A program made the translations under genes and the position numbers. The notes under the pieces were generated by a model, which did not search any database, was not told the DNA's origin, and worked only from the letters and a program-made list of their open reading frames with translations. Of a stretch of DNA of 64,000 bases, positions 54,359 to 59,302 are shown piece after piece. How positions within the stretch are numbered: the stretch's first letter is position 1; every line of letters starts with the position of its first letter. The DNA lies in the sequence record OR496884.1. One strand, given 5' to 3'.

Positions 54359-54949
54359 TTACGCTGGAATAAATTGACGATGAGTGTGTTTACAAATCCG
54401 GCATTTTCGAATTATTATGGGATTTGTCCAAGAAACCAGTTGAACCTGTACAGCATGACAAGCAGGGCAGACGTGGTGAACTTTACAAACCTGTTCCCGT
54501 CTTTTTGCTAGATTAAGTCCAAACTCACTTGGGTATGCGTCTTTTAGTATCTCAAACATATCTATTTTAGTTTTTGGAATTTCAGACTGGAAACTCCCTT
54601 GTACTAAAATCTTTCTGGAACAGGGTCTTTGAACACGGCATGACGTTAGATTTTTACTTAAGAACATAGGACCGAGATCTAGGACAGAATTGTAGAAATT
54701 GTTTGAATCCAAGAGGACTTTTGCATAAGAATCTTCTTTTGCATCCCCAGTTCCGAGTACCGTCATTACTGCATTACCGATCCCAGATTTTTCAGGAAAC
54801 GCAGAGGTGGTTTCTACGTGTTCTTTACTGATAGGATCAATAAATCGGTGGATAGCTGGATTAGGGGTCTTACCTAAAAATTCCATGAGGTCGCCATACC
54901 AACCTTCATGTCCGGTCGGACAAATAGAAACTATTTTTTTATCAGACAT
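54359..54949 (-). CDS. Protein with C-terminal zinc ribbon
   Basis: CPAC-x18-CRIC. Confidence 0.65.
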   Translation of the reverse strand: MSDKKIVSICPTGHEGWYGDLMEFLGKTPNPAIHRFIDPISKEHVETTSAFPEKSGIGNAVMTVLGTGDAKEDSYAKVLLDSNNFYNSVLDLGPMFLSKNLTSCRVQRPCSRKILVQGSFQSEIPKTKIDMFEILKDAYPSEFGLNLAKRREQVCKVHHVCPACHAVQVQLVSWTNPIIIRKCRICKHTHRQFIPA

Positions 54950-55403
54950 CTTGAGTTTTCTCCTGACTGATAATTTCCAAAAGTTTATCCACGTCTTCTT
55001 TCTTTACTGTTGGTGCAAAGAAAGAAACGACTCTAAGTACATGTTTAGAACTAAACCGTCCCGGTTGGTTAGAAGTATTGTCAGAGATGATTTCGTTAGA
55101 ATTGGTGTTAAATAACTCCAGTAATATTGGACCATCTCCTACCAATGTTTCTAAATCCGTAATAAAGTCTGGGATATTTAAATAATTAAGATCACATTTA
55201 AAACTGGATTTAAGAGTGAGGTTAATTAAACCCCCCTCGCCGTTATCTATAGTTGATTTTGGAAAGAAAGGAACGTCATTAAAAGAAATACTTCCTGTAG
55301 CCAAGCGGTTCACATAAAAACAGGGTGTTATTAGCATTTCATTTTCAAGACCGCGTTTTAATTCTTGTAGTAAATTATCGAGTGCAGGATTTTTAGAAAT
55401 CAT
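54942..55403 (-). CDS. Hypothetical protein (153 aa)
   Basis: Coupled in the operon. Confidence 0.55.
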   Translation of the reverse strand: MISKNPALDNLLQELKRGLENEMLITPCFYVNRLATGSISFNDVPFFPKSTIDNGEGGLINLTLKSSFKCDLNYLNIPDFITDLETLVGDGPILLELFNTNSNEIISDNTSNQPGRFSSKHVLRVVSFFAPTVKKEDVDKLLEIISQEKTQDV

Positions 55404-55433
55404 AAGGTTATTCCAAAACGTTGTTAACGAAAT

Positions 55434-55952
55434 TTAGATTAATTGTTTTAACGTTTCTTTTTGTTCATTGCTCAATGGGGTATTTTTATGTTCCATGAAG
55501 TCAATGATTTTATTAACCTGTTGTTGCGAAAGTGTACTTTCTTGTGTGTTCTTTTGGACGGGCATTTCCCCTGTAAAATCAAAATCAATTGAACTGATTT
55601 CTGGGTTATTAAGGAACTGTGTTTCGGCCTGGTAAAACAACTCTTCGATTTCGGTAACAACTGCGTATTTTTGGATAGGTGTTTTAGTTTTTGAGAACGC
55701 AGGGAAATTACCGGCAGGGATAGGAGCCATTCCAAAACAAAGAACTGAAAAACCTAATTCCAAACTGTAATAACAGTGTAACTGTTTGGATATTAATTTC
55801 CAATCTTTTTCTATGGGTTCAACAAGCCCAGAAATATAGAAATCAGGATTATTTTTAACCACTTCCTTAAATGCATCAACACAATTGTCTTTAAGAATAA
55901 CCGGACGGACACGACGGTCAGAGCAATTAAGAGTAAGTTTACTATAGGACAT
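55434..55952 (-). CDS. Hypothetical protein
   Basis: AAGGA RBS before MSYSKLT. Confidence 0.6.
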   Translation of the reverse strand: MSYSKLTLNCSDRRVRPVILKDNCVDAFKEVVKNNPDFYISGLVEPIEKDWKLISKQLHCYYSLELGFSVLCFGMAPIPAGNFPAFSKTKTPIQKYAVVTEIEELFYQAETQFLNNPEISSIDFDFTGEMPVQKNTQESTLSQQQVNKIIDFMEHKNTPLSNEQKETLKQLI

Positions 55953-55989
55953 GTTATTTTCCTTTTCTAAATAAGGGAGGAAAGAGGGA

Positions 55990-56394
55990 TTAAGTAATAC
56001 TAGGTTTAATAAACTTTTCTTTTGGATTATCAAACCAGTTATCAAATCTTTCCCATTTATTATTTACATATTCAACAATGGGGAAGTCTTTGGTGGAAAT
56101 ATAAAGATTGTTAATTTTACTACACTCTGCATCTTTAAATTTCTTTTGAAGATCGTAGGTAAAACTAGAAAAGTTTTTATTGTATTCCTTTACCATTTGA
56201 AACCATTCTAGTACTGCATTTGATTCACCTTTAATAACGAGCGATGTTTCATCGGCAGAAAAATGGTTTATTTGCAAACCAGGACAAAGCTCAATTAACT
56301 CTTTGTAGATTCCTGTTTTAGCAATCATCATGGTATGAAAAACAGACCCAGTATAAGTATTAACCGGAGCATAAACTTTTAATTCAACGTGCAT
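55990..56394 (-). CDS. Hypothetical protein, paralog of 57561..57989
   Basis: Shared AP....TG..FH...S..+.G....V+.W...EY pattern. Confidence 0.6.
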   Translation of the reverse strand: MHVELKVYAPVNTYTGSVFHTMMIAKTGIYKELIELCPGLQINHFSADETSLVIKGESNAVLEWFQMVKEYNKNFSSFTYDLQKKFKDAECSKINNLYISTKDFPIVEYVNNKWERFDNWFDNPKEKFIKPSIT

Positions 56395-56423
56395 GTTTAT
56401 TTCCTAAATTAATGTGTTATATT

Positions 56424-56642
56424 TTAATAATGTTTAACAACTCCGGTTATTTCAAACCCAAATTGTTGCGCCTGTTCTTTTGCTTGTTCTTTAGGAACAC
56501 TGCCAGGAATAACTAAGTTGACACAACCGCCTGCTGCTTCCAAATTAATTCCATAGCCATGTTTTTTAGCCACAACAGTGGTATTGTTATGGTTCTTAAC
56601 TTCCACATAGGTATAAAGATTCTTTACTAAACTGTAATTCAT
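56424..56642 (-). CDS. Hypothetical protein (72 aa)
   Basis: AAGGA RBS. Confidence 0.55.
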   Translation of the reverse strand: MNYSLVKNLYTYVEVKNHNNTTVVAKKHGYGINLEAAGGCVNLVIPGSVPKEQAKEQAQQFGFEITGVVKHY

Positions 56643-56660
56643 ACGGACAGTCCTTTTAAA

Positions 56661-57116
56661 TTAATTGAATTGGTATTTCACACCAAAAACAACAGCGTTC
56701 CACATTCCATCAACCATAATACTCAGTTTTGGAACTGGCGTTGGAATGGTAAGTTCTATTGCTGCAACAGGAGCAATTCCATGTCCCCAATCTACCCCAT
56801 GATAGGTTCTTTTGTTATCATCAAATTTAGTTCCGGTGTCATAACCGGTAGCCAAACCTAAACGATAACCAACGTTTACCCATTCGGATTGATAAAAATC
56901 ATCACTCCAAGATACTTGAATAGATTGTTTTTCAATGGAGTTCTTTTGCACATAAATAACTGAAAAGTTATCGTACTGAACACCAATAGAAGGATGAATT
57001 TCATTTTGACCTGCTGGGTCGTAATGTTTGCTAAAACCACCTGCGATCAAATACAGATCAGCAGCGTTAACATGACTTGCAAACAGAATAGACAAAACTA
57101 CTGATTTGTATTTCAT
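56661..57116 (-). CDS. Outer-membrane beta-barrel, PagP (Pseudomonas PA1343-type)-like
   Basis: Signal peptide ...HVNA|AD; SKHYDP...NEIH; KNS; GLATGY; GIAP; terminal VKYQF. Confidence 0.7.
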   Translation of the reverse strand: MKYKSVVLSILFASHVNAADLYLIAGGFSKHYDPAGQNEIHPSIGVQYDNFSVIYVQKNSIEKQSIQVSWSDDFYQSEWVNVGYRLGLATGYDTGTKFDDNKRTYHGVDWGHGIAPVAAIELTIPTPVPKLSIMVDGMWNAVVFGVKYQFN

Positions 57117-57168
57117 AGCGTTTCCTTAGTGAAAGGTAGCGAGACATCCCTATCCCGCTACAGATTAA

Positions 57169-57561
57169 TTAATAAATTTGTAACCGATTGGTTATTTTTT
57201 CATAACCTTTGTTTAACTGTTCTAACAAGATTTTTTGGTCATTAGGTTCTAATACCTGCATACCTTCGTTGAAGAATTCAAGAAACTTTTCTTTATCAAA
57301 TAGTTCTTCTCGACTAAACCATTTCTGAGTTCCCTGAAATCCAGGATTATCCCACTTATGCCACGTAACTTGACAGTGTATCGTGTGTTCTTTGTCGTTT
57401 GGAAATATTCGTTTGAGATAATAAATTAATACCATTAAATCTTTATGTTTGTAATGAGCATTAATTTTTTCAATAATTTCGGCATCCCTACCAAAGGACT
57501 TTAAACAAAGTTTGATCATTTCCTTTAGCAACGCGCCTGTCGGGCTGTAATCTGAGCTCAT
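57169..57561 (-). CDS. Hypothetical protein (130 aa)
   Basis: TAATG coupling to the upstream gene. Confidence 0.6.
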   Translation of the reverse strand: MSSDYSPTGALLKEMIKLCLKSFGRDAEIIEKINAHYKHKDLMVLIYYLKRIFPNDKEHTIHCQVTWHKWDNPGFQGTQKWFSREELFDKEKFLEFFNEGMQVLEPNDQKILLEQLNKGYEKITNRLQIY

Positions 57562-57989
57562 TACAGTTTTTCCATATTGGACTGGAACCAGGGAACAGCG
57601 CACGGAAGATCTTGATGGTCTTTTCTTTCCAACCATTTCAGATTTTTCAACTTGACATTGATGCGACCGTATTTGCGCCAATCTCCTTGAAGGAATTGTT
57701 TACGGATATGGTTTTTAACATACTCAACCATATTTTTAGTAGTAGGGTATTCTTCAGCAAACAGATCCAGCCAGGAAATAACTTCTTGTCTGGGACCAAC
57801 CATGGCAAAACTGTGTTCACCACCATGATGAGGGCAGCCGGTGGCATCCGGCGCTAATTGATAAAGATCGTAGTTGTTGTAAAGCAGGTGGAACAGTGCT
57901 TTCCCCGTCACACTAACTTGGGGAGCTGTCAGATCAACACGAACATCTACTGGACCCAGAGTAGTTTCAAAGTCATCTGCTTGATACAT
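57561..57989 (-). CDS. Hypothetical protein, paralog of 55990..56394
   Basis: AGGAG RBS; host-like codons. Confidence 0.65.
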   Translation of the reverse strand: MYQADDFETTLGPVDVRVDLTAPQVSVTGKALFHLLYNNYDLYQLAPDATGCPHHGGEHSFAMVGPRQEVISWLDLFAEEYPTTKNMVEYVKNHIRKQFLQGDWRKYGRINVKLKNLKWLERKDHQDLPCAVPWFQSNMEKL

Positions 57990-58022
57990 AGTTCTCTCCT
58001 AAATTTGAGAATATCTTTTTTT

Positions 58023-58424
58023 TTAAACGGAACGAATGAAAACAAAAGAGGGAAAGTTTTTTGCAATTCCATTTTGACATGTTGTTAGCTGGACAAACCC
58101 GGCATAATCATCATGAGCTACCGAGGCGATTATCCAAGCTTGCCTTCCTTTATGAAAATATTGAGGATTGGCCAGCAAAAAAGATTTTGTCTTTACTTGA
58201 TGCTTATATTTCTTTGGAACATCAAGTTTAGAAAATAAATTAATAACTTCTTCTCTGGAATTGTAAGGCCTAAATCCAGGTCCCCCTATGTGTACCTGAT
58301 AGTCACCGGATTGAACCATTTCATCATCATTTAAAAATCTTGCGGTCCCTTTAATTCCATTGGGAAAAGTATAAGGGAATGGTTTGCAATTTTTTATCTC
58401 TTGGATTAACTGATCAATGGTCAT
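58023..58424 (-). CDS. Hypothetical protein (133 aa)
   Basis: Fills the gap. Confidence 0.55.
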   Translation of the reverse strand: MTIDQLIQEIKNCKPFPYTFPNGIKGTARFLNDDEMVQSGDYQVHIGGPGFRPYNSREEVINLFSKLDVPKKYKHQVKTKSFLLANPQYFHKGRQAWIIASVAHDDYAGFVQLTTCQNGIAKNFPSFVFIRSV

Positions 58425-58443
58425 TTATTATTTTTCCGATAAT

Positions 58444-58833
58444 TTATTGTATGTTATCAAAATCGTCATTAAACAAAACAACAACATCTTTTACTGATTG
58501 GTGAAAATCCTTTTCCAAATTAATCTGAATTTCCTTCCCACGGATTTTAGTGTTCAGAATCCTTGGATTTTGCCCTAAGACAACAGTAATGACATTTTTA
58601 GCAAAGAAGCTATCTTGATCTACTTGGACACATTGTTTACCTAATTGAAAAACAATGTAAATCTCTTCAGAATAACATCTTACCGATGTGTAGAGATCAA
58701 AATTTCCCATAGGCGTTACTTCACAAAAAGTCGGAAGAGGGGCGTTATTTTTAATCAAATAACTTACCCCCATGGTGAATCCAAAAATAAATCCAGTCAA
58801 TTTCTCCGCTACTTTATTGTCGTCTATAGCCAC
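58444..58833 (-). CDS. Hypothetical protein (129 aa)
   Basis: AAGGA RBS, GTG start. Confidence 0.55.
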   Translation of the reverse strand: MAIDDNKVAEKLTGFIFGFTMGVSYLIKNNAPLPTFCEVTPMGNFDLYTSVRCYSEEIYIVFQLGKQCVQVDQDSFFAKNVITVVLGQNPRILNTKIRGKEIQINLEKDFHQSVKDVVVLFNDDFDNIQ

Positions 58834-58879
58834 GATATTTCCTTTTAATTTGGTTTATTAAAAATAATTTAAACAAAAC

Positions 58880-59302
58880 TTAGCGTTTAAATTCTAACAG
58901 TGTTTTTATCACTTGATCATCATTTTTAAGGTCTGGTCGAATAATTCCAACCATTTTCATAACAGCATCAAACCCATAATTTTTGTTAACAAGTATTTCA
59001 TTATTGGTTATGTATGAATACCATAACTTGTGGTTACCGTGTAACCGGCTAAGATCAAACCGAGGGAATTGATCTGAATGTCTAGGTGTCAAAGCTAATT
59101 TATTGTCTGTAAAGAAAAAGATGGTTGTCGATTTCATAACACGAATTTCCATCCAGTCCCAGTTTTTCAACAAATCAACCAGTTCTTTAGGAAATACTTT
59201 AAGACCATGTGTCTTGCTTGTTTTACAATTTATGATGGCGTATTTCGGATAAACACTGACCACAGTTGCCGGATCACGGAAAATCAATTCTTTATTAGAC
59301 AT
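58880..59302 (-). CDS. Hypothetical early protein (140 aa)
   Basis: AAGGA RBS; first gene after the promoter motif at 59347. Confidence 0.6.
   Translation of the reverse strand: MSNKELIFRDPATVVSVYPKYAIINCKTSKTHGLKVFPKELVDLLKNWDWMEIRVMKSTTIFFFTDNKLALTPRHSDQFPRFDLSRLHGNHKLWYSYITNNEILVNKNYGFDAVMKMVGIIRPDLKNDDQVIKTLLEFKR

What the first reader, a model, noticed from the sequence alone, without database searches (positions are those of the whole stretch)
56661..57116. Phage-encoded PagP-like outer-membrane enzyme, possible lipid A remodelling by a lytic jumbo phage
Seen: cleavable signal peptide, alternating amphipathic strands and terminal VKYQF beta-signal, consistent with a small OM barrel. 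From memory, it aligns with the divergent P. aeruginosa PA1343-type PagP palmitoyltransferase: YLIAGGFSKHYDP..NEIHPSIGVQY vs YLQTSVYTRHFNP..NNHQDLLGLEY, KNS vs RNS, GLATGY vs GLLQGY, GIAP vs GVAP. His and Asn-Ser sit at the expected catalytic positions. Inference: the phage may acylate host lipid A to block superinfection, stiffen the envelope during a long latent period, or alter the endotoxicity of released LPS.
Basis: partly seen in the sequence, partly recalled or inferred. Interest (0 to 1): 0.78.

Follow-up and report, generated by a model that had tools for sequence, protein, structure and literature searches.

The report
Phage PagP-like outer-membrane acyltransferase gene
A lytic jumbo phage of the fish pathogen Aeromonas salmonicida carries a small outer-membrane barrel protein related to the bacterial PagP enzymes that add a fatty acid to lipid A; databases already label its phage relatives as PagP, but no phage copy has been tested.

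Summary
Window 56661-57116 (-) is a real 151-aa gene of Aeromonas phage AerS_266 (Chimalliviridae, 243.7 kb, virulent), deposited as 'hypothetical protein'. It has a signal peptide, and AlphaFold (pLDDT 93.8) predicts an 8-stranded barrel.

I recovered the real P. aeruginosa PA1343 sequence, anchored by published PA1343 primers.

- Pairwise BLAST to PA1343 is not significant.
- Profile-profile comparison is significant: 98.1% probability (E 1.4e-13, 118 columns) to the PA1343 family and 91.6% (E 8e-7) to enterobacterial PagP.
- Controls are low: PagL 12.5%, OmpW 17.9%, reversed alignments under 1%.
- Phage S29-x-H31 and K58-N59-S60 align with E. coli T31-x-H33 and K75-D76-S77. They are nearly invariant and sit at the outer rim of the barrel.
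- Fold search shows only a generic 8-stranded barrel. OmpA and PagL score above PagP.

This is not new as a class. PHROG 3600 and RefSeq already name homologues 'PagP' in Straboviridae, Ackermannviridae, Lahexavirus and Ludhianavirus phages of Aeromonas and Vibrio. No activity has been shown for any of them.

Verdict: a new member of a known kind. Enzyme homology is well supported; the physiological role is inferred. Moderate interest.

The parts
56661..57116 (-). Complete CDS (151 codons plus TAA stop) of the PagP-like outer-membrane protein; WNV46019.1 in OR496884.1
   Evidence: PHROG 3600 E 2.5e-28
57063..57116 (-). Signal peptide, residues 1-18 (MKYKSVVLSILFASHVNA), with the predicted cut after V-N-A
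   Evidence: Read from the sequence. The model shows a low-confidence N-terminal helix 3-13 ahead of strand 1. No signal-peptide predictor was available.
56664..57062 (-). Mature 8-stranded beta-barrel, residues 19-151. Strands: 21-31, 40-48, 51-56, 65-76, 81-89, 115-125, 131-138, 141-149.
   Evidence: AlphaFold2 with alignment A1: pLDDT 93.8, pTM 0.83
57024..57032 (-). Codons for S29-K30-H31. This (S/T)-x-H motif at the outer end of strand 1 aligns with PA1343 T33-x-H35 and E. coli PagP T31-x-H33 (catalytic His).
   Evidence: hhalign alignments. H is present in 53/54 phage-family, 36/36 PA1343-family and 82/82 PF07017-type sequences.
56937..56945 (-). Codons for K58-N59-S60 in loop L2. They align with PA1343 R67-N68-S69 and E. 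coli PagP K75-D76-S77 (catalytic Asp-Ser).
   Evidence: N59 is in 54/54 and S60 in 52/54 sequences; PA1343 family N 36/36 and S 36/36; PF07017 type D 82/82 and S 82/82.
56979..57005 (-). Codons for N38-E39-I-H-P42-S-I-G45-V. This N-E...P..G motif of loop L1 and strand 2 aligns with E. coli N47-E48-R-P50..G54 and PA1343 N43-N44...G50.
56664..56693 (-). C-terminal strand 8 with the BAM beta-signal-like end (VVFGVKYQFN). The aromatic residue is second to last.
   Evidence: most family members end in F or L
57123..57127 (-). Ribosome-binding site AAGGA, 6 nt before the ATG
   Evidence: Read
57136..57161 (-). 11-bp GC-rich hairpin between the stop of the upstream gene (57169) and this gene. It may be a weak terminator or a transcript-stabilising element; its role is unknown.
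   Evidence: RNA fold -18 kcal/mol, z -3.0 against shuffles. The terminator scan did not list it because there is no T run.

Best explanation
The gene encodes a secreted 133-residue 8-stranded outer-membrane barrel. It belongs to the PagP superfamily and is closest to the divergent P. aeruginosa PA1343 type. Shown here: the homology, the predicted barrel, and near-invariant (S/T)-x-H and (K/R)-(N/D)-S motifs. Inferred from standard OMP topology: these motifs lie in loops L1 and L2, at the outer-leaflet rim of the barrel. Inferred mechanism: early in lytic infection the protein is made in the cytoplasm, exported by Sec and inserted by BAM. As in PagP, it would take an acyl chain from a phospholipid that has strayed into the outer leaflet and transfer it to lipid A. 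The acceptor could instead be another outer-leaflet lipid, such as phosphatidylglycerol. The His/Ser pair would do the chemistry, and Asn stands in for the enterobacterial Asp, as it does in the active PA1343 enzyme. The likely benefit is a change to the infected cell's surface. It could keep the outer membrane tight while host envelope synthesis is shut down. It could also reduce adsorption of further phages to infected cells, debris and vesicles. Which benefit applies, which acyl chain is used and which lipid A position is modified are all unknown. The gene is accessory. The sister phage ZPAH34 lacks it, and some phages carry truncated copies.
For: PHROG 3600 'PagP' matches at E 2.5e-28. The 54-sequence family has nearly invariant G26, S29, H31, N38, G45, N59, S60, S65, G87, G91, Y92 and P116. 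AlphaFold gives pLDDT 93.8 and 8 strands. hhalign of the phage family gives 98.1%, E 1.4e-13 over 118 columns against the PA1343 family, and 91.6%, E 8.1e-7 over 103 columns against the PF07017-type family. Controls: PagL 12.5%, OmpW 17.9%, reversed families 0.1-0.2%. The family HMM scores real PA1343 at 38.4 bits. It hit 22 of 401 sampled Gammaproteobacteria genomes; nearly all the hit proteins printed show an x-H ... (N/D)-S pattern (exceptions include N-T, N-C and one with no clear motif), and E. coli, which has OmpA, OmpX, OmpW and PagP, gave no hit. Two bacterial proteins are recognised both by Pfam PagP above its cut-off and by the phage profile (G138:C150 and G239:C36). PA1343 identity is anchored by published primers, and its lipid A palmitoyltransferase role is stated. 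Reading inward-facing residues from strand parity, the upper half of the barrel is small and apolar (A141, V143, G145, A115, V117, A119, G87, A89, M134, M138). The lower half is polar (K147, Q149, E121, T123, R85, N81). That fits an acyl-chain pocket; it is my inference. Gene GC 0.371 equals window GC 0.369. Homologues occur in at least five virulent phage lineages of Aeromonas and Vibrio.
Against: No enzyme activity has been shown for any phage homologue. Pfam PF07017 and NCBIfam do not match this protein or any of the 54 family members. Pairwise BLAST to PA1343 is not significant. Structure search ranks OmpA, OprF, NspA and PagL above PagP, so the fold adds no specificity. The N-terminal amphipathic helix of E. 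coli PagP is missing. The catalytic Asp is Asn. No expression data exist. All neighbouring genes are ORFans, so context gives no help. A transferase cannot be told from a hydrolase by sequence.
Confidence: 0.6

Rival explanations
1. The protein is a PagP-superfamily enzyme with a different reaction. It could be an outer-membrane phospholipase or lysophospholipase, or an acyltransferase onto a non-lipid-A acceptor. It would clear mislocalised phospholipids, or weaken the outer membrane to help lysis.
For: It has the same conserved His/Ser and barrel as the best explanation. From general knowledge, E. coli PagP slowly hydrolyses phospholipid when lipid A is absent, and Salmonella PagP also palmitoylates phosphatidylglycerol. 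The phage family is a separate branch with 16% identity to either characterised enzyme, so specificity may have drifted.
Against: Both characterised relatives, PA1343 and E. coli PagP, are lipid A palmitoyltransferases. The gene is not next to recognisable lysis genes.
Confidence: 0.2
2. The protein is a non-catalytic small outer-membrane protein, like lambda Lom or OmpX/Ail/OmpA-type barrels. It would act as a surface decoy, a receptor mask or a structural component.
For: The best structural matches are OmpA, OprF, NspA and Opa barrels. Many phages encode small barrels of unknown role.
Against: Polar loop residues H31, N59 and S60 are nearly invariant across 54 sequences at 18% mean column identity. 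That is unexpected for a passive barrel. There is no profile similarity to OmpW, and the family HMM gave no hit in E. coli, which has OmpA, OmpX and OmpW.
Confidence: 0.1
3. The protein is a PagL-like lipid A 3-O-deacylase.
For: PagL (2ERV) aligns structurally at Z 10.7, rmsd 2.8 A over 114 residues, better than the PagP NMR model. PagL-family clusters appear among structural neighbours.
Against: hhalign against a 25-sequence PagL family gives only 12.5% probability over 30 columns. No Pfam PF09411 match was found. The conserved His and Ser lie in the N-terminal half and are about 28 residues apart. From general knowledge, PagL has a C-terminal H-x-S motif instead.
Confidence: 0.04
4. The gene is a decaying or unexpressed passenger with no role in AerS_266.
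For: It is absent from the congener ZPAH34. Copies are truncated or split in phages 25, phiAS4 and 65. No transcript data exist.
Against: The frame is intact, with a good ribosome-binding site, a complete signal peptide and all motif residues. GC matches the genome. A 92%-identical full-length copy exists in an independent metagenome.
Confidence: 0.04

Closest known systems
P. aeruginosa PagP (PA1343 / PA14_46900), the 'divergent' lipid A palmitoyltransferase (Thaipisuttikul et al. 2014, cited in PMC10374164)
   Same: Both are about 150 aa, with a signal peptide followed directly by an 8-stranded barrel and no N-terminal helix. The shared motifs are (S/T)-x-H, N-(E/N)...G, (K/R)-N-S, G-Y and G-(I/V)-A-P. 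Profile-profile probability is 98.1% over 118 columns. Both have Asn, not Asp, before the Ser.
   Different: Identity is only 16% in the profile alignment, and pairwise BLAST is not significant. PA1343 is chromosomal and PhoPQ-regulated, whereas this gene sits in a virulent phage. The long loop L3 (residues 90-114) has a different sequence. The phage protein's activity, chain length and lipid A position are unknown.
Enterobacterial PagP (Pfam PF07017; E. coli b0622; PDB 1THQ, 1MM4)
   Same: The catalytic motifs align: T31-x-H33, N47-E48-x-P50, K75-D76-S77. hhalign gives 91.6%, E 8e-7 over 103 columns. It is an 8-stranded outer-membrane barrel (Z 8.5).
   Different: The Pfam model gives no match. 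The phage protein lacks the 19-residue N-terminal amphipathic helix. It has Asn for Asp76. The spacing from His to (N/D)S is 28 residues rather than 43.
PHROG 3600 and RefSeq phage proteins named 'antimicrobial peptide resistance and lipid A acylation protein PagP' (for example YP_009613204.1 of AS-gz, YP_010668907.1 of D6, YP_009847375.1 of LAh_8, YP_009838383.1 of Vibrio phage YC)
   Same: These are true homologues at 40-52% identity over the full length. The PHROG match is E 2.5e-28. All come from virulent phages of Aeromonas or Vibrio.
   Different: The AerS_266 copy is still deposited as 'hypothetical protein'. Its nearest relatives are in Aeromonas phages Aswh_1 and ZPAH1 (about 230 kb; I did not check their taxonomy) at 52%, closer than the Ludhianavirus phages D3/D6 (placed with Chaoshanvirus in Chimalliviridae) at 47%. 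Its own genus-mate ZPAH34 lacks the gene.
PagL lipid A 3-O-deacylase (Pfam PF09411; PDB 2ERV)
   Same: It is also a small 8-stranded outer-membrane barrel enzyme that uses His and Ser at the outer rim. The structural match is Z 10.7.
   Different: There is no sequence-profile relationship (12.5%). The catalytic residues sit in a different part of the chain.
Phage-encoded surface modifiers and small outer-membrane proteins used for exclusion (T5 Llp, lambda Lom and Bor, O-antigen-modifying gtr and oac genes of temperate phages); from general knowledge
   Same: Each is a phage product sent to the host envelope that changes the cell surface during infection or lysogeny.
   Different: Those act on protein receptors or O-antigen, not lipid A. 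Most are from temperate phages. None is a PagP-type barrel.

Membership tests
PagP superfamily (broad sense: PF07017-type plus PA1343-type) | Secreted 8-stranded antiparallel outer-membrane beta-barrel | tested here: met
   Signal peptide read from the sequence. AlphaFold2 gives pLDDT 93.8 and 8 strands. All top fold matches are 8-stranded OM barrels.
PagP superfamily (broad sense: PF07017-type plus PA1343-type) | Catalytic His (E. coli H33) and Ser (S77), preceded by Asp or Asn (D76), in extracellular loops L1 and L2 | tested here: met
   H31, N59 and S60 align to H33, D76 and S77. They are present in 53/54, 54/54 and 52/54 family members. Their loop positions follow from the strand map plus standard OMP topology, which is an inference. 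Asp is replaced by Asn, as in PA1343.
PagP superfamily (broad sense: PF07017-type plus PA1343-type) | Statistically supported homology to characterised members, above the background for unrelated barrels | tested here: met
   hhalign 98.1% and 91.6%, against 12.5% (PagL), 17.9% (OmpW) and under 1% (reversed).
PagP superfamily (broad sense: PF07017-type plus PA1343-type) | Acyl (palmitoyl) transfer from phospholipid to lipid A | not testable with these tools
   Needs expression and lipid A mass spectrometry. No report was found for any phage homologue.
Pfam PF07017 (enterobacterial-type PagP, strict sense) | Match to the Pfam HMM above its gathering score | tested here: not met
   No PF07017 hit at E up to 10 for this protein, and none at E up to 0.01 for any of the 54 family members.
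Pfam PF07017 (enterobacterial-type PagP, strict sense) | N-terminal amphipathic alpha-helix before strand A | tested here: not met
   The mature chain starts at A19 and strand 1 starts at L21, leaving no room for a helix.
PA1343-type PagP (Pseudomonas) | Family motifs YTRH, NN...G.E, FRNS, GY, GVAP in the same order on a barrel of about 150 aa | tested here: met
   The phage protein has FSKH, NE...G.Q, QKNS, GY and GIAP, aligned column for column. The PA1343 sequence was recovered and primer-verified.
PA1343-type PagP (Pseudomonas) | Direct sequence-level membership (pairwise or single-HMM match at family level) | tested here: inconclusive
   BLASTP E 0.055. phmmer with PA1343 does not reach the phage family directly, though it hits one bacterial bridge, L090, at 1e-6. 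The phage-family HMM scores PA1343 at 38.4 bits. I read it as a sister family, not the same family.
PagL (PF09411) | Pfam or profile match and a C-terminal H-x-S catalytic motif | tested here: not met
   No Pfam hit. hhalign gives 12.5% over 30 columns.

The most novel reading that the evidence does not exclude
Large virulent phages of Aeromonas and Vibrio from at least five unrelated lineages (Chaoshanvirus, Ludhianavirus, Tulanevirus in Straboviridae, Lahexavirus, Ackermannviridae) share a mobile PagP-like gene. On this reading they use it to acylate host lipid A or outer-leaflet lipids during lytic infection. That would be an uncharacterised host-takeover or exclusion function acting on the innermost part of LPS. 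Separately, this phage family is the sequence link showing that the 'divergent' P. aeruginosa PagP and enterobacterial PagP are true homologues with one catalytic (S/T)xH ... (D/N)S design.
Probability: 0.35. Interest if true: 0.65.

Novelty: new member of a known kind. Interest (0 to 1): 0.42.

Why it matters
If the enzyme is active, a strictly lytic phage rewrites lipid A within a 30-minute infection. Phage-driven LPS changes are known for O-antigen in lysogens, not for lipid A in lytic cycles. This could affect four things: how infected cells and their debris bind further phages; how tight the outer membrane stays until lysis; how strongly lysates of a fish pathogen stimulate innate immunity, which matters for phage therapy preparations in aquaculture; and how PagP-type enzymes evolved. 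The practical gain now is modest. The AerS_266 gene can be annotated, and the 'PagP' label on its phage relatives gains a stated basis: PA1343-type homology with the catalytic residues kept.

Tried and rejected
- Single-sequence AlphaFold was useless (pLDDT 31). The alignment-based run was needed.
- Sequence searches against Pfam, NCBIfam and the PDB gave nothing, alone or as a profile.
- The search for related loci could not use alignments A1 or A2, which have no conserved 7-10-residue stretch. The single protein found no bacterial relative.
- The word-indexed protein search added little.
- Fold searches in seven libraries never separated PagP from other 8-stranded barrels. I therefore do not use the fold as evidence for PagP specifically.
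- The original PA1343 paper and the PagP structure paper are not held. PA1343's experimentally mutated residues could not be checked. The E. coli H33/D76/S77 assignment rests on general knowledge.
- A primer-pattern scan of 401 Pseudomonadaceae genomes missed P. aeruginosa. The metagenome scan then found it.
- Promoter and terminator scans were at chance level.
- No RNA run holds the region.
- Neighbouring genes gave no functional context.
- Cluster look-ups of bacterial relatives returned only unnamed MAG proteins. Whether Aeromonas hosts have their own PagP-like gene was not determined.
- Locus L165 comes from an unpublished genome (G040).
- The PagL-like deacylase reading and the passive-barrel reading were considered and ranked low (conservation).

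Full report
**What and where.** The window is 100% identical to Aeromonas phage AerS_266 (OR496884.1, 243,674 bp; host A. salmonicida; genus Chaoshanvirus). That genus was moved into Chimalliviridae, the nucleus-forming jumbo phages. The phage is virulent, encodes chimallin and PhuZ, and has a 30-min latent period and a burst of about 35 at 25 C. Its paper does not mention PagP, lipid or the outer membrane (PMC10673249). The ORF at 56661-57116 (-) is real: 151 aa, an ATG start, and AAGGA 6 nt upstream. It is deposited as 'hypothetical protein' WNV46019.1.

**Anatomy.** Residues 1-18 (MKYKSVVLSILFASHVNA) read as a Sec signal peptide with a V-x-A cleavage site; this is my reading of the sequence. 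A single-sequence AlphaFold run failed (pLDDT 31). With a 54-sequence alignment (A1) the model reaches pLDDT 93.8 and pTM 0.83.
- The eight strands are 21-31, 40-48, 51-56, 65-76, 81-89, 115-125, 131-138 and 141-149.
- With both termini periplasmic, as is the rule for such barrels, the extracellular loops are L1 32-39, L2 57-64, L3 90-114 and L4 139-140.

**Family.** An exhaustive HMMER search of 1.84 billion representatives found 63 relatives. Those whose context or name I checked are phage proteins. Despite 18% mean column identity, several positions are nearly invariant: G26, S29, H31, N38, G45, N59, S60, S65, G87, G91, Y92 and P116. Pfam, NCBIfam and PDB sequence searches found nothing, for the protein or for any member. 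PHROGs places it in phrog_3600, 'antimicrobial peptide resistance and lipid A acylation protein PagP', at E 2.5e-28.

**Testing the PA1343 claim.**
- A 2026 paper lists primers for deleting and quantifying PA1343 (pagP) in PAO1 (PMC13265386 supplement).
- An exact scan of metagenome contigs with the reverse complement of one qPCR primer returned five contigs.
- Three contigs also carry the start-codon primer and both pagP-EXT primers. In L137 I checked the spacing: exactly 945 bp, the paper's wild-type amplicon; L140 and L141 give the same spacing.
- Pairwise BLASTP of the phage protein against it is not significant (E 0.055).

The profile evidence is strong. The A1 HMM scores PA1343 at 38.4 bits. 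In 401 sampled Gammaproteobacteria genomes it hit 22. One hit is a P. fluorescens-group orthologue of PA1343 (L091), which RefSeq misnames 'sn-glycerol-3-phosphate transporter'. E. coli gave no hit.

I built a 36-sequence PA1343 family and an 82-sequence PF07017-type family, then ran hhalign:

| Phage family compared with | Probability | E-value | Columns |
|---|---|---|---|
| PA1343 family | 98.1% | 1.4e-13 | 118 |
| PF07017-type family | 91.6% | 8.1e-7 | 103 |
| PagL family (25 sequences) | 12.5% | 0.0023 | 30 |
| OmpW family (27 sequences) | 17.9% | 0.0014 | 20 (N-terminal, signal-peptide region) |
| Reversed PA1343 family | 0.2% | 0.3 | 40 |
| Reversed PF07017-type family | 0.1% | 0.71 | 43 |

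PA1343 family against PF07017-type family gives only 69%, and the match is partial. The signal is therefore specific and not a general beta-barrel artefact.

Two further points tie the groups together. Two bacterial proteins are recognised both by Pfam PagP above its cut-off and by the phage profile (G138:C150 and G239:C36). Also, phmmer from PA1343 and from E. coli PagP each reaches some of the phage-profile hits. The three groups form one superfamily, and the phage family lies between the other two, nearer PA1343.

**Catalytic residues.** The alignments give these equivalences:

| Phage protein | PA1343 | E. coli PagP (mature numbering) |
|---|---|---|
| S29-x-H31 | T33-x-H35 | T31-x-H33 |
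| N38-E39 | N43-N44 | N47-E48 |
| K58-N59-S60 | R67-N68-S69 | K75-D76-S77 |

H33, D76 and S77 are the established catalytic residues of E. coli PagP. This is general knowledge (Hwang et al. 2002; Bishop 2005); I could not open those papers. Conservation in the three families is as follows:
- His: 53/54, 36/36 and 82/82.
- Ser: 52/54, 36/36 and 82/82.
- The residue before Ser: Asn 54/54, Asn 36/36 and Asp 82/82.

PA1343 is an active palmitoyltransferase, so Asn at this position is compatible with activity. H31 ends strand 1, and N59-S60 lie in L2. That puts them at the outer-leaflet rim, where PagP's active site sits.

From strand parity, I infer that inward-facing residues are small and apolar in the upper half of the barrel and polar in the lower half. 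That would suit an acyl-chain pocket. I could not check coordinates.

**What the fold does and does not say.** Seven structure searches agree on a generic 8-stranded outer-membrane barrel.
- OmpA scores Z 12, OprF 11.7, NspA 10.7, PagL 10.7 and the PagP NMR model 8.5.
- The top Swiss-Prot AlphaFold hit is a PagP from Methylobacillus (TM 0.62), closely followed by Opa and OmpA.
- ESM Atlas neighbours include PagP, PagL and the PA1343-like 'sn-glycerol-3-phosphate transporter' clusters at TM 0.66-0.74.

**Distribution and context.** tblastn finds homologues in 59 phage records from Aeromonas, Vibrio and Stenotrophomonas phages.
- The lineages include Tulanevirus (Straboviridae), Ludhianavirus (listed with Chaoshanvirus among genera added to Chimalliviridae), Lahexavirus and Campanilevirus (Ackermannviridae).
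- RefSeq already names these proteins PagP.
- The nearest relatives of the AerS_266 copy, at 52% identity, are in Aeromonas phages Aswh_1 and ZPAH1 (about 230 kb; I did not check their taxonomy). Ludhianavirus phages D3/D6 are at 47%.
- The genus-mate ZPAH34 has no copy. Its region between nrdB and a thioredoxin-like gene is shorter.
- Phages 25, phiAS4 and 65 carry truncated or split copies.

So this is a mobile accessory gene of large virulent phages, not a core gene. Its GC (0.371) equals that of the window (0.369). The nine neighbouring genes are ORFans, apart from one match to a PHROG of unknown function. Promoter and terminator scans are at chance level. No RNA-seq run holds the region.

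**Literature.** PagP-like genes in phages have been noted only by annotation: Burkholderia phage CSP3 orf72 (PMC10269572) and V. coralliilyticus phages in a 2026 preprint. In both they are discussed as possible lysogenic-conversion factors. I found no experimental test and no discussion for virulent or jumbo phages.

**Mechanism and confidence.**
- Shown: the gene, the homology, the conserved catalytic-type residues and the predicted barrel.
- Inferred: Sec export and BAM insertion; acyl transfer from outer-leaflet phospholipid to lipid A or another lipid; a benefit through outer-membrane barrier maintenance or reduced adsorption to infected cells and debris.
- My estimates: about 0.9 for superfamily membership, about 0.7 for a working enzyme, and about 0.5 for lipid A acylation specifically. 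Overall confidence in the stated explanation is 0.6.
- Rivals: another lipid reaction by the same active site (0.2), a passive barrel (0.1), a PagL-like deacylase (0.04), and an unexpressed passenger gene (0.04).

**Verdict.** Novelty is limited, because the class label already exists in PHROGs and RefSeq for its homologues. What this work adds:
- a primer-anchored check of the PA1343 link;
- controlled profile evidence that the phage family bridges the two bacterial PagP types;
- the residue map;
- the finding that the gene is an accessory shared across unrelated virulent phages.

The earlier-findings look-up returned only this same stretch and an unrelated note, and neither affected the reading. 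Locus L165, from an unpublished genome, was excluded, and nothing here depends on it.

Noticed in passing
L091:1501-1980 (-) and its 90% cluster: Orthologues of P. aeruginosa PagP (PA1343) in the P. fluorescens group are widely named 'sn-glycerol-3-phosphate transporter' in RefSeq and UniRef (840-member cluster). This looks like a propagated misannotation of a 160-aa outer-membrane barrel.
   Followed up: partly
L099/L144 (G138:C150) and L101/L149 (G239:C36): These uncultured gammaproteobacterial proteins are matched both by Pfam PagP (PF07017, above cut-off) and by the phage-family profile. They have x-H, N-E and (K/R)-D-S motifs and bridge the enterobacterial and phage/PA1343 branches.
   Followed up: partly
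window 57136-57161 (-): A stable 11-bp GC-rich hairpin (-18 kcal/mol, z -3.0) lies between the upstream gene's stop and the PagP-like gene. No T run follows it, so it is not a classic intrinsic terminator.
   Followed up: partly
window about 54942-59302 (-), compared with L208 (ZPAH34): This is a run of ten small same-strand genes between nrdB and a thioredoxin-like gene. Nine have no Pfam hit, and only one has a PHROG hit, of unknown function (57561-57989, phrog_37156). The sister phage ZPAH34 has a shorter version lacking several of them, including the PagP-like gene, so this is a variable accessory island.
   Followed up: partly
phage records DQ529280.1 (phage 25), HM452125.1 (phiAS4), GU459069.1 (phage 65); Homologues in these Aeromonas phages align over only 65-81% of the protein, or are split into two annotated CDSs. 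This suggests truncation or frameshift, and that the gene is dispensable.
   Followed up: no
G440:C1:2401817-2402300: One Pseudomonas genome carries a PA1343 homologue interrupted by two in-frame TGA codons, so it is probably a pseudogene.
   Followed up: no
P0001; runs X1 and X2: A 92%-identical full-length copy of the protein occurs on a 3.9-kb metagenome contig. Groundwater and soil metagenomes hold 9-15% of the sampled words of window 56000-58000. Close relatives of AerS_266 therefore occur in the environment.
   Followed up: no
BFVD hits: Small predicted 8-stranded barrels with TM 0.6-0.75 to this model occur in many unrelated phages: Vibrio pVco-5, JSF10 and nt-1, Salinibacter M8CRM-1, Cellulophaga phiST and uncultured Caudovirales. 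Whether they keep the His/Asn-Ser motifs was not checked.
   Followed up: no
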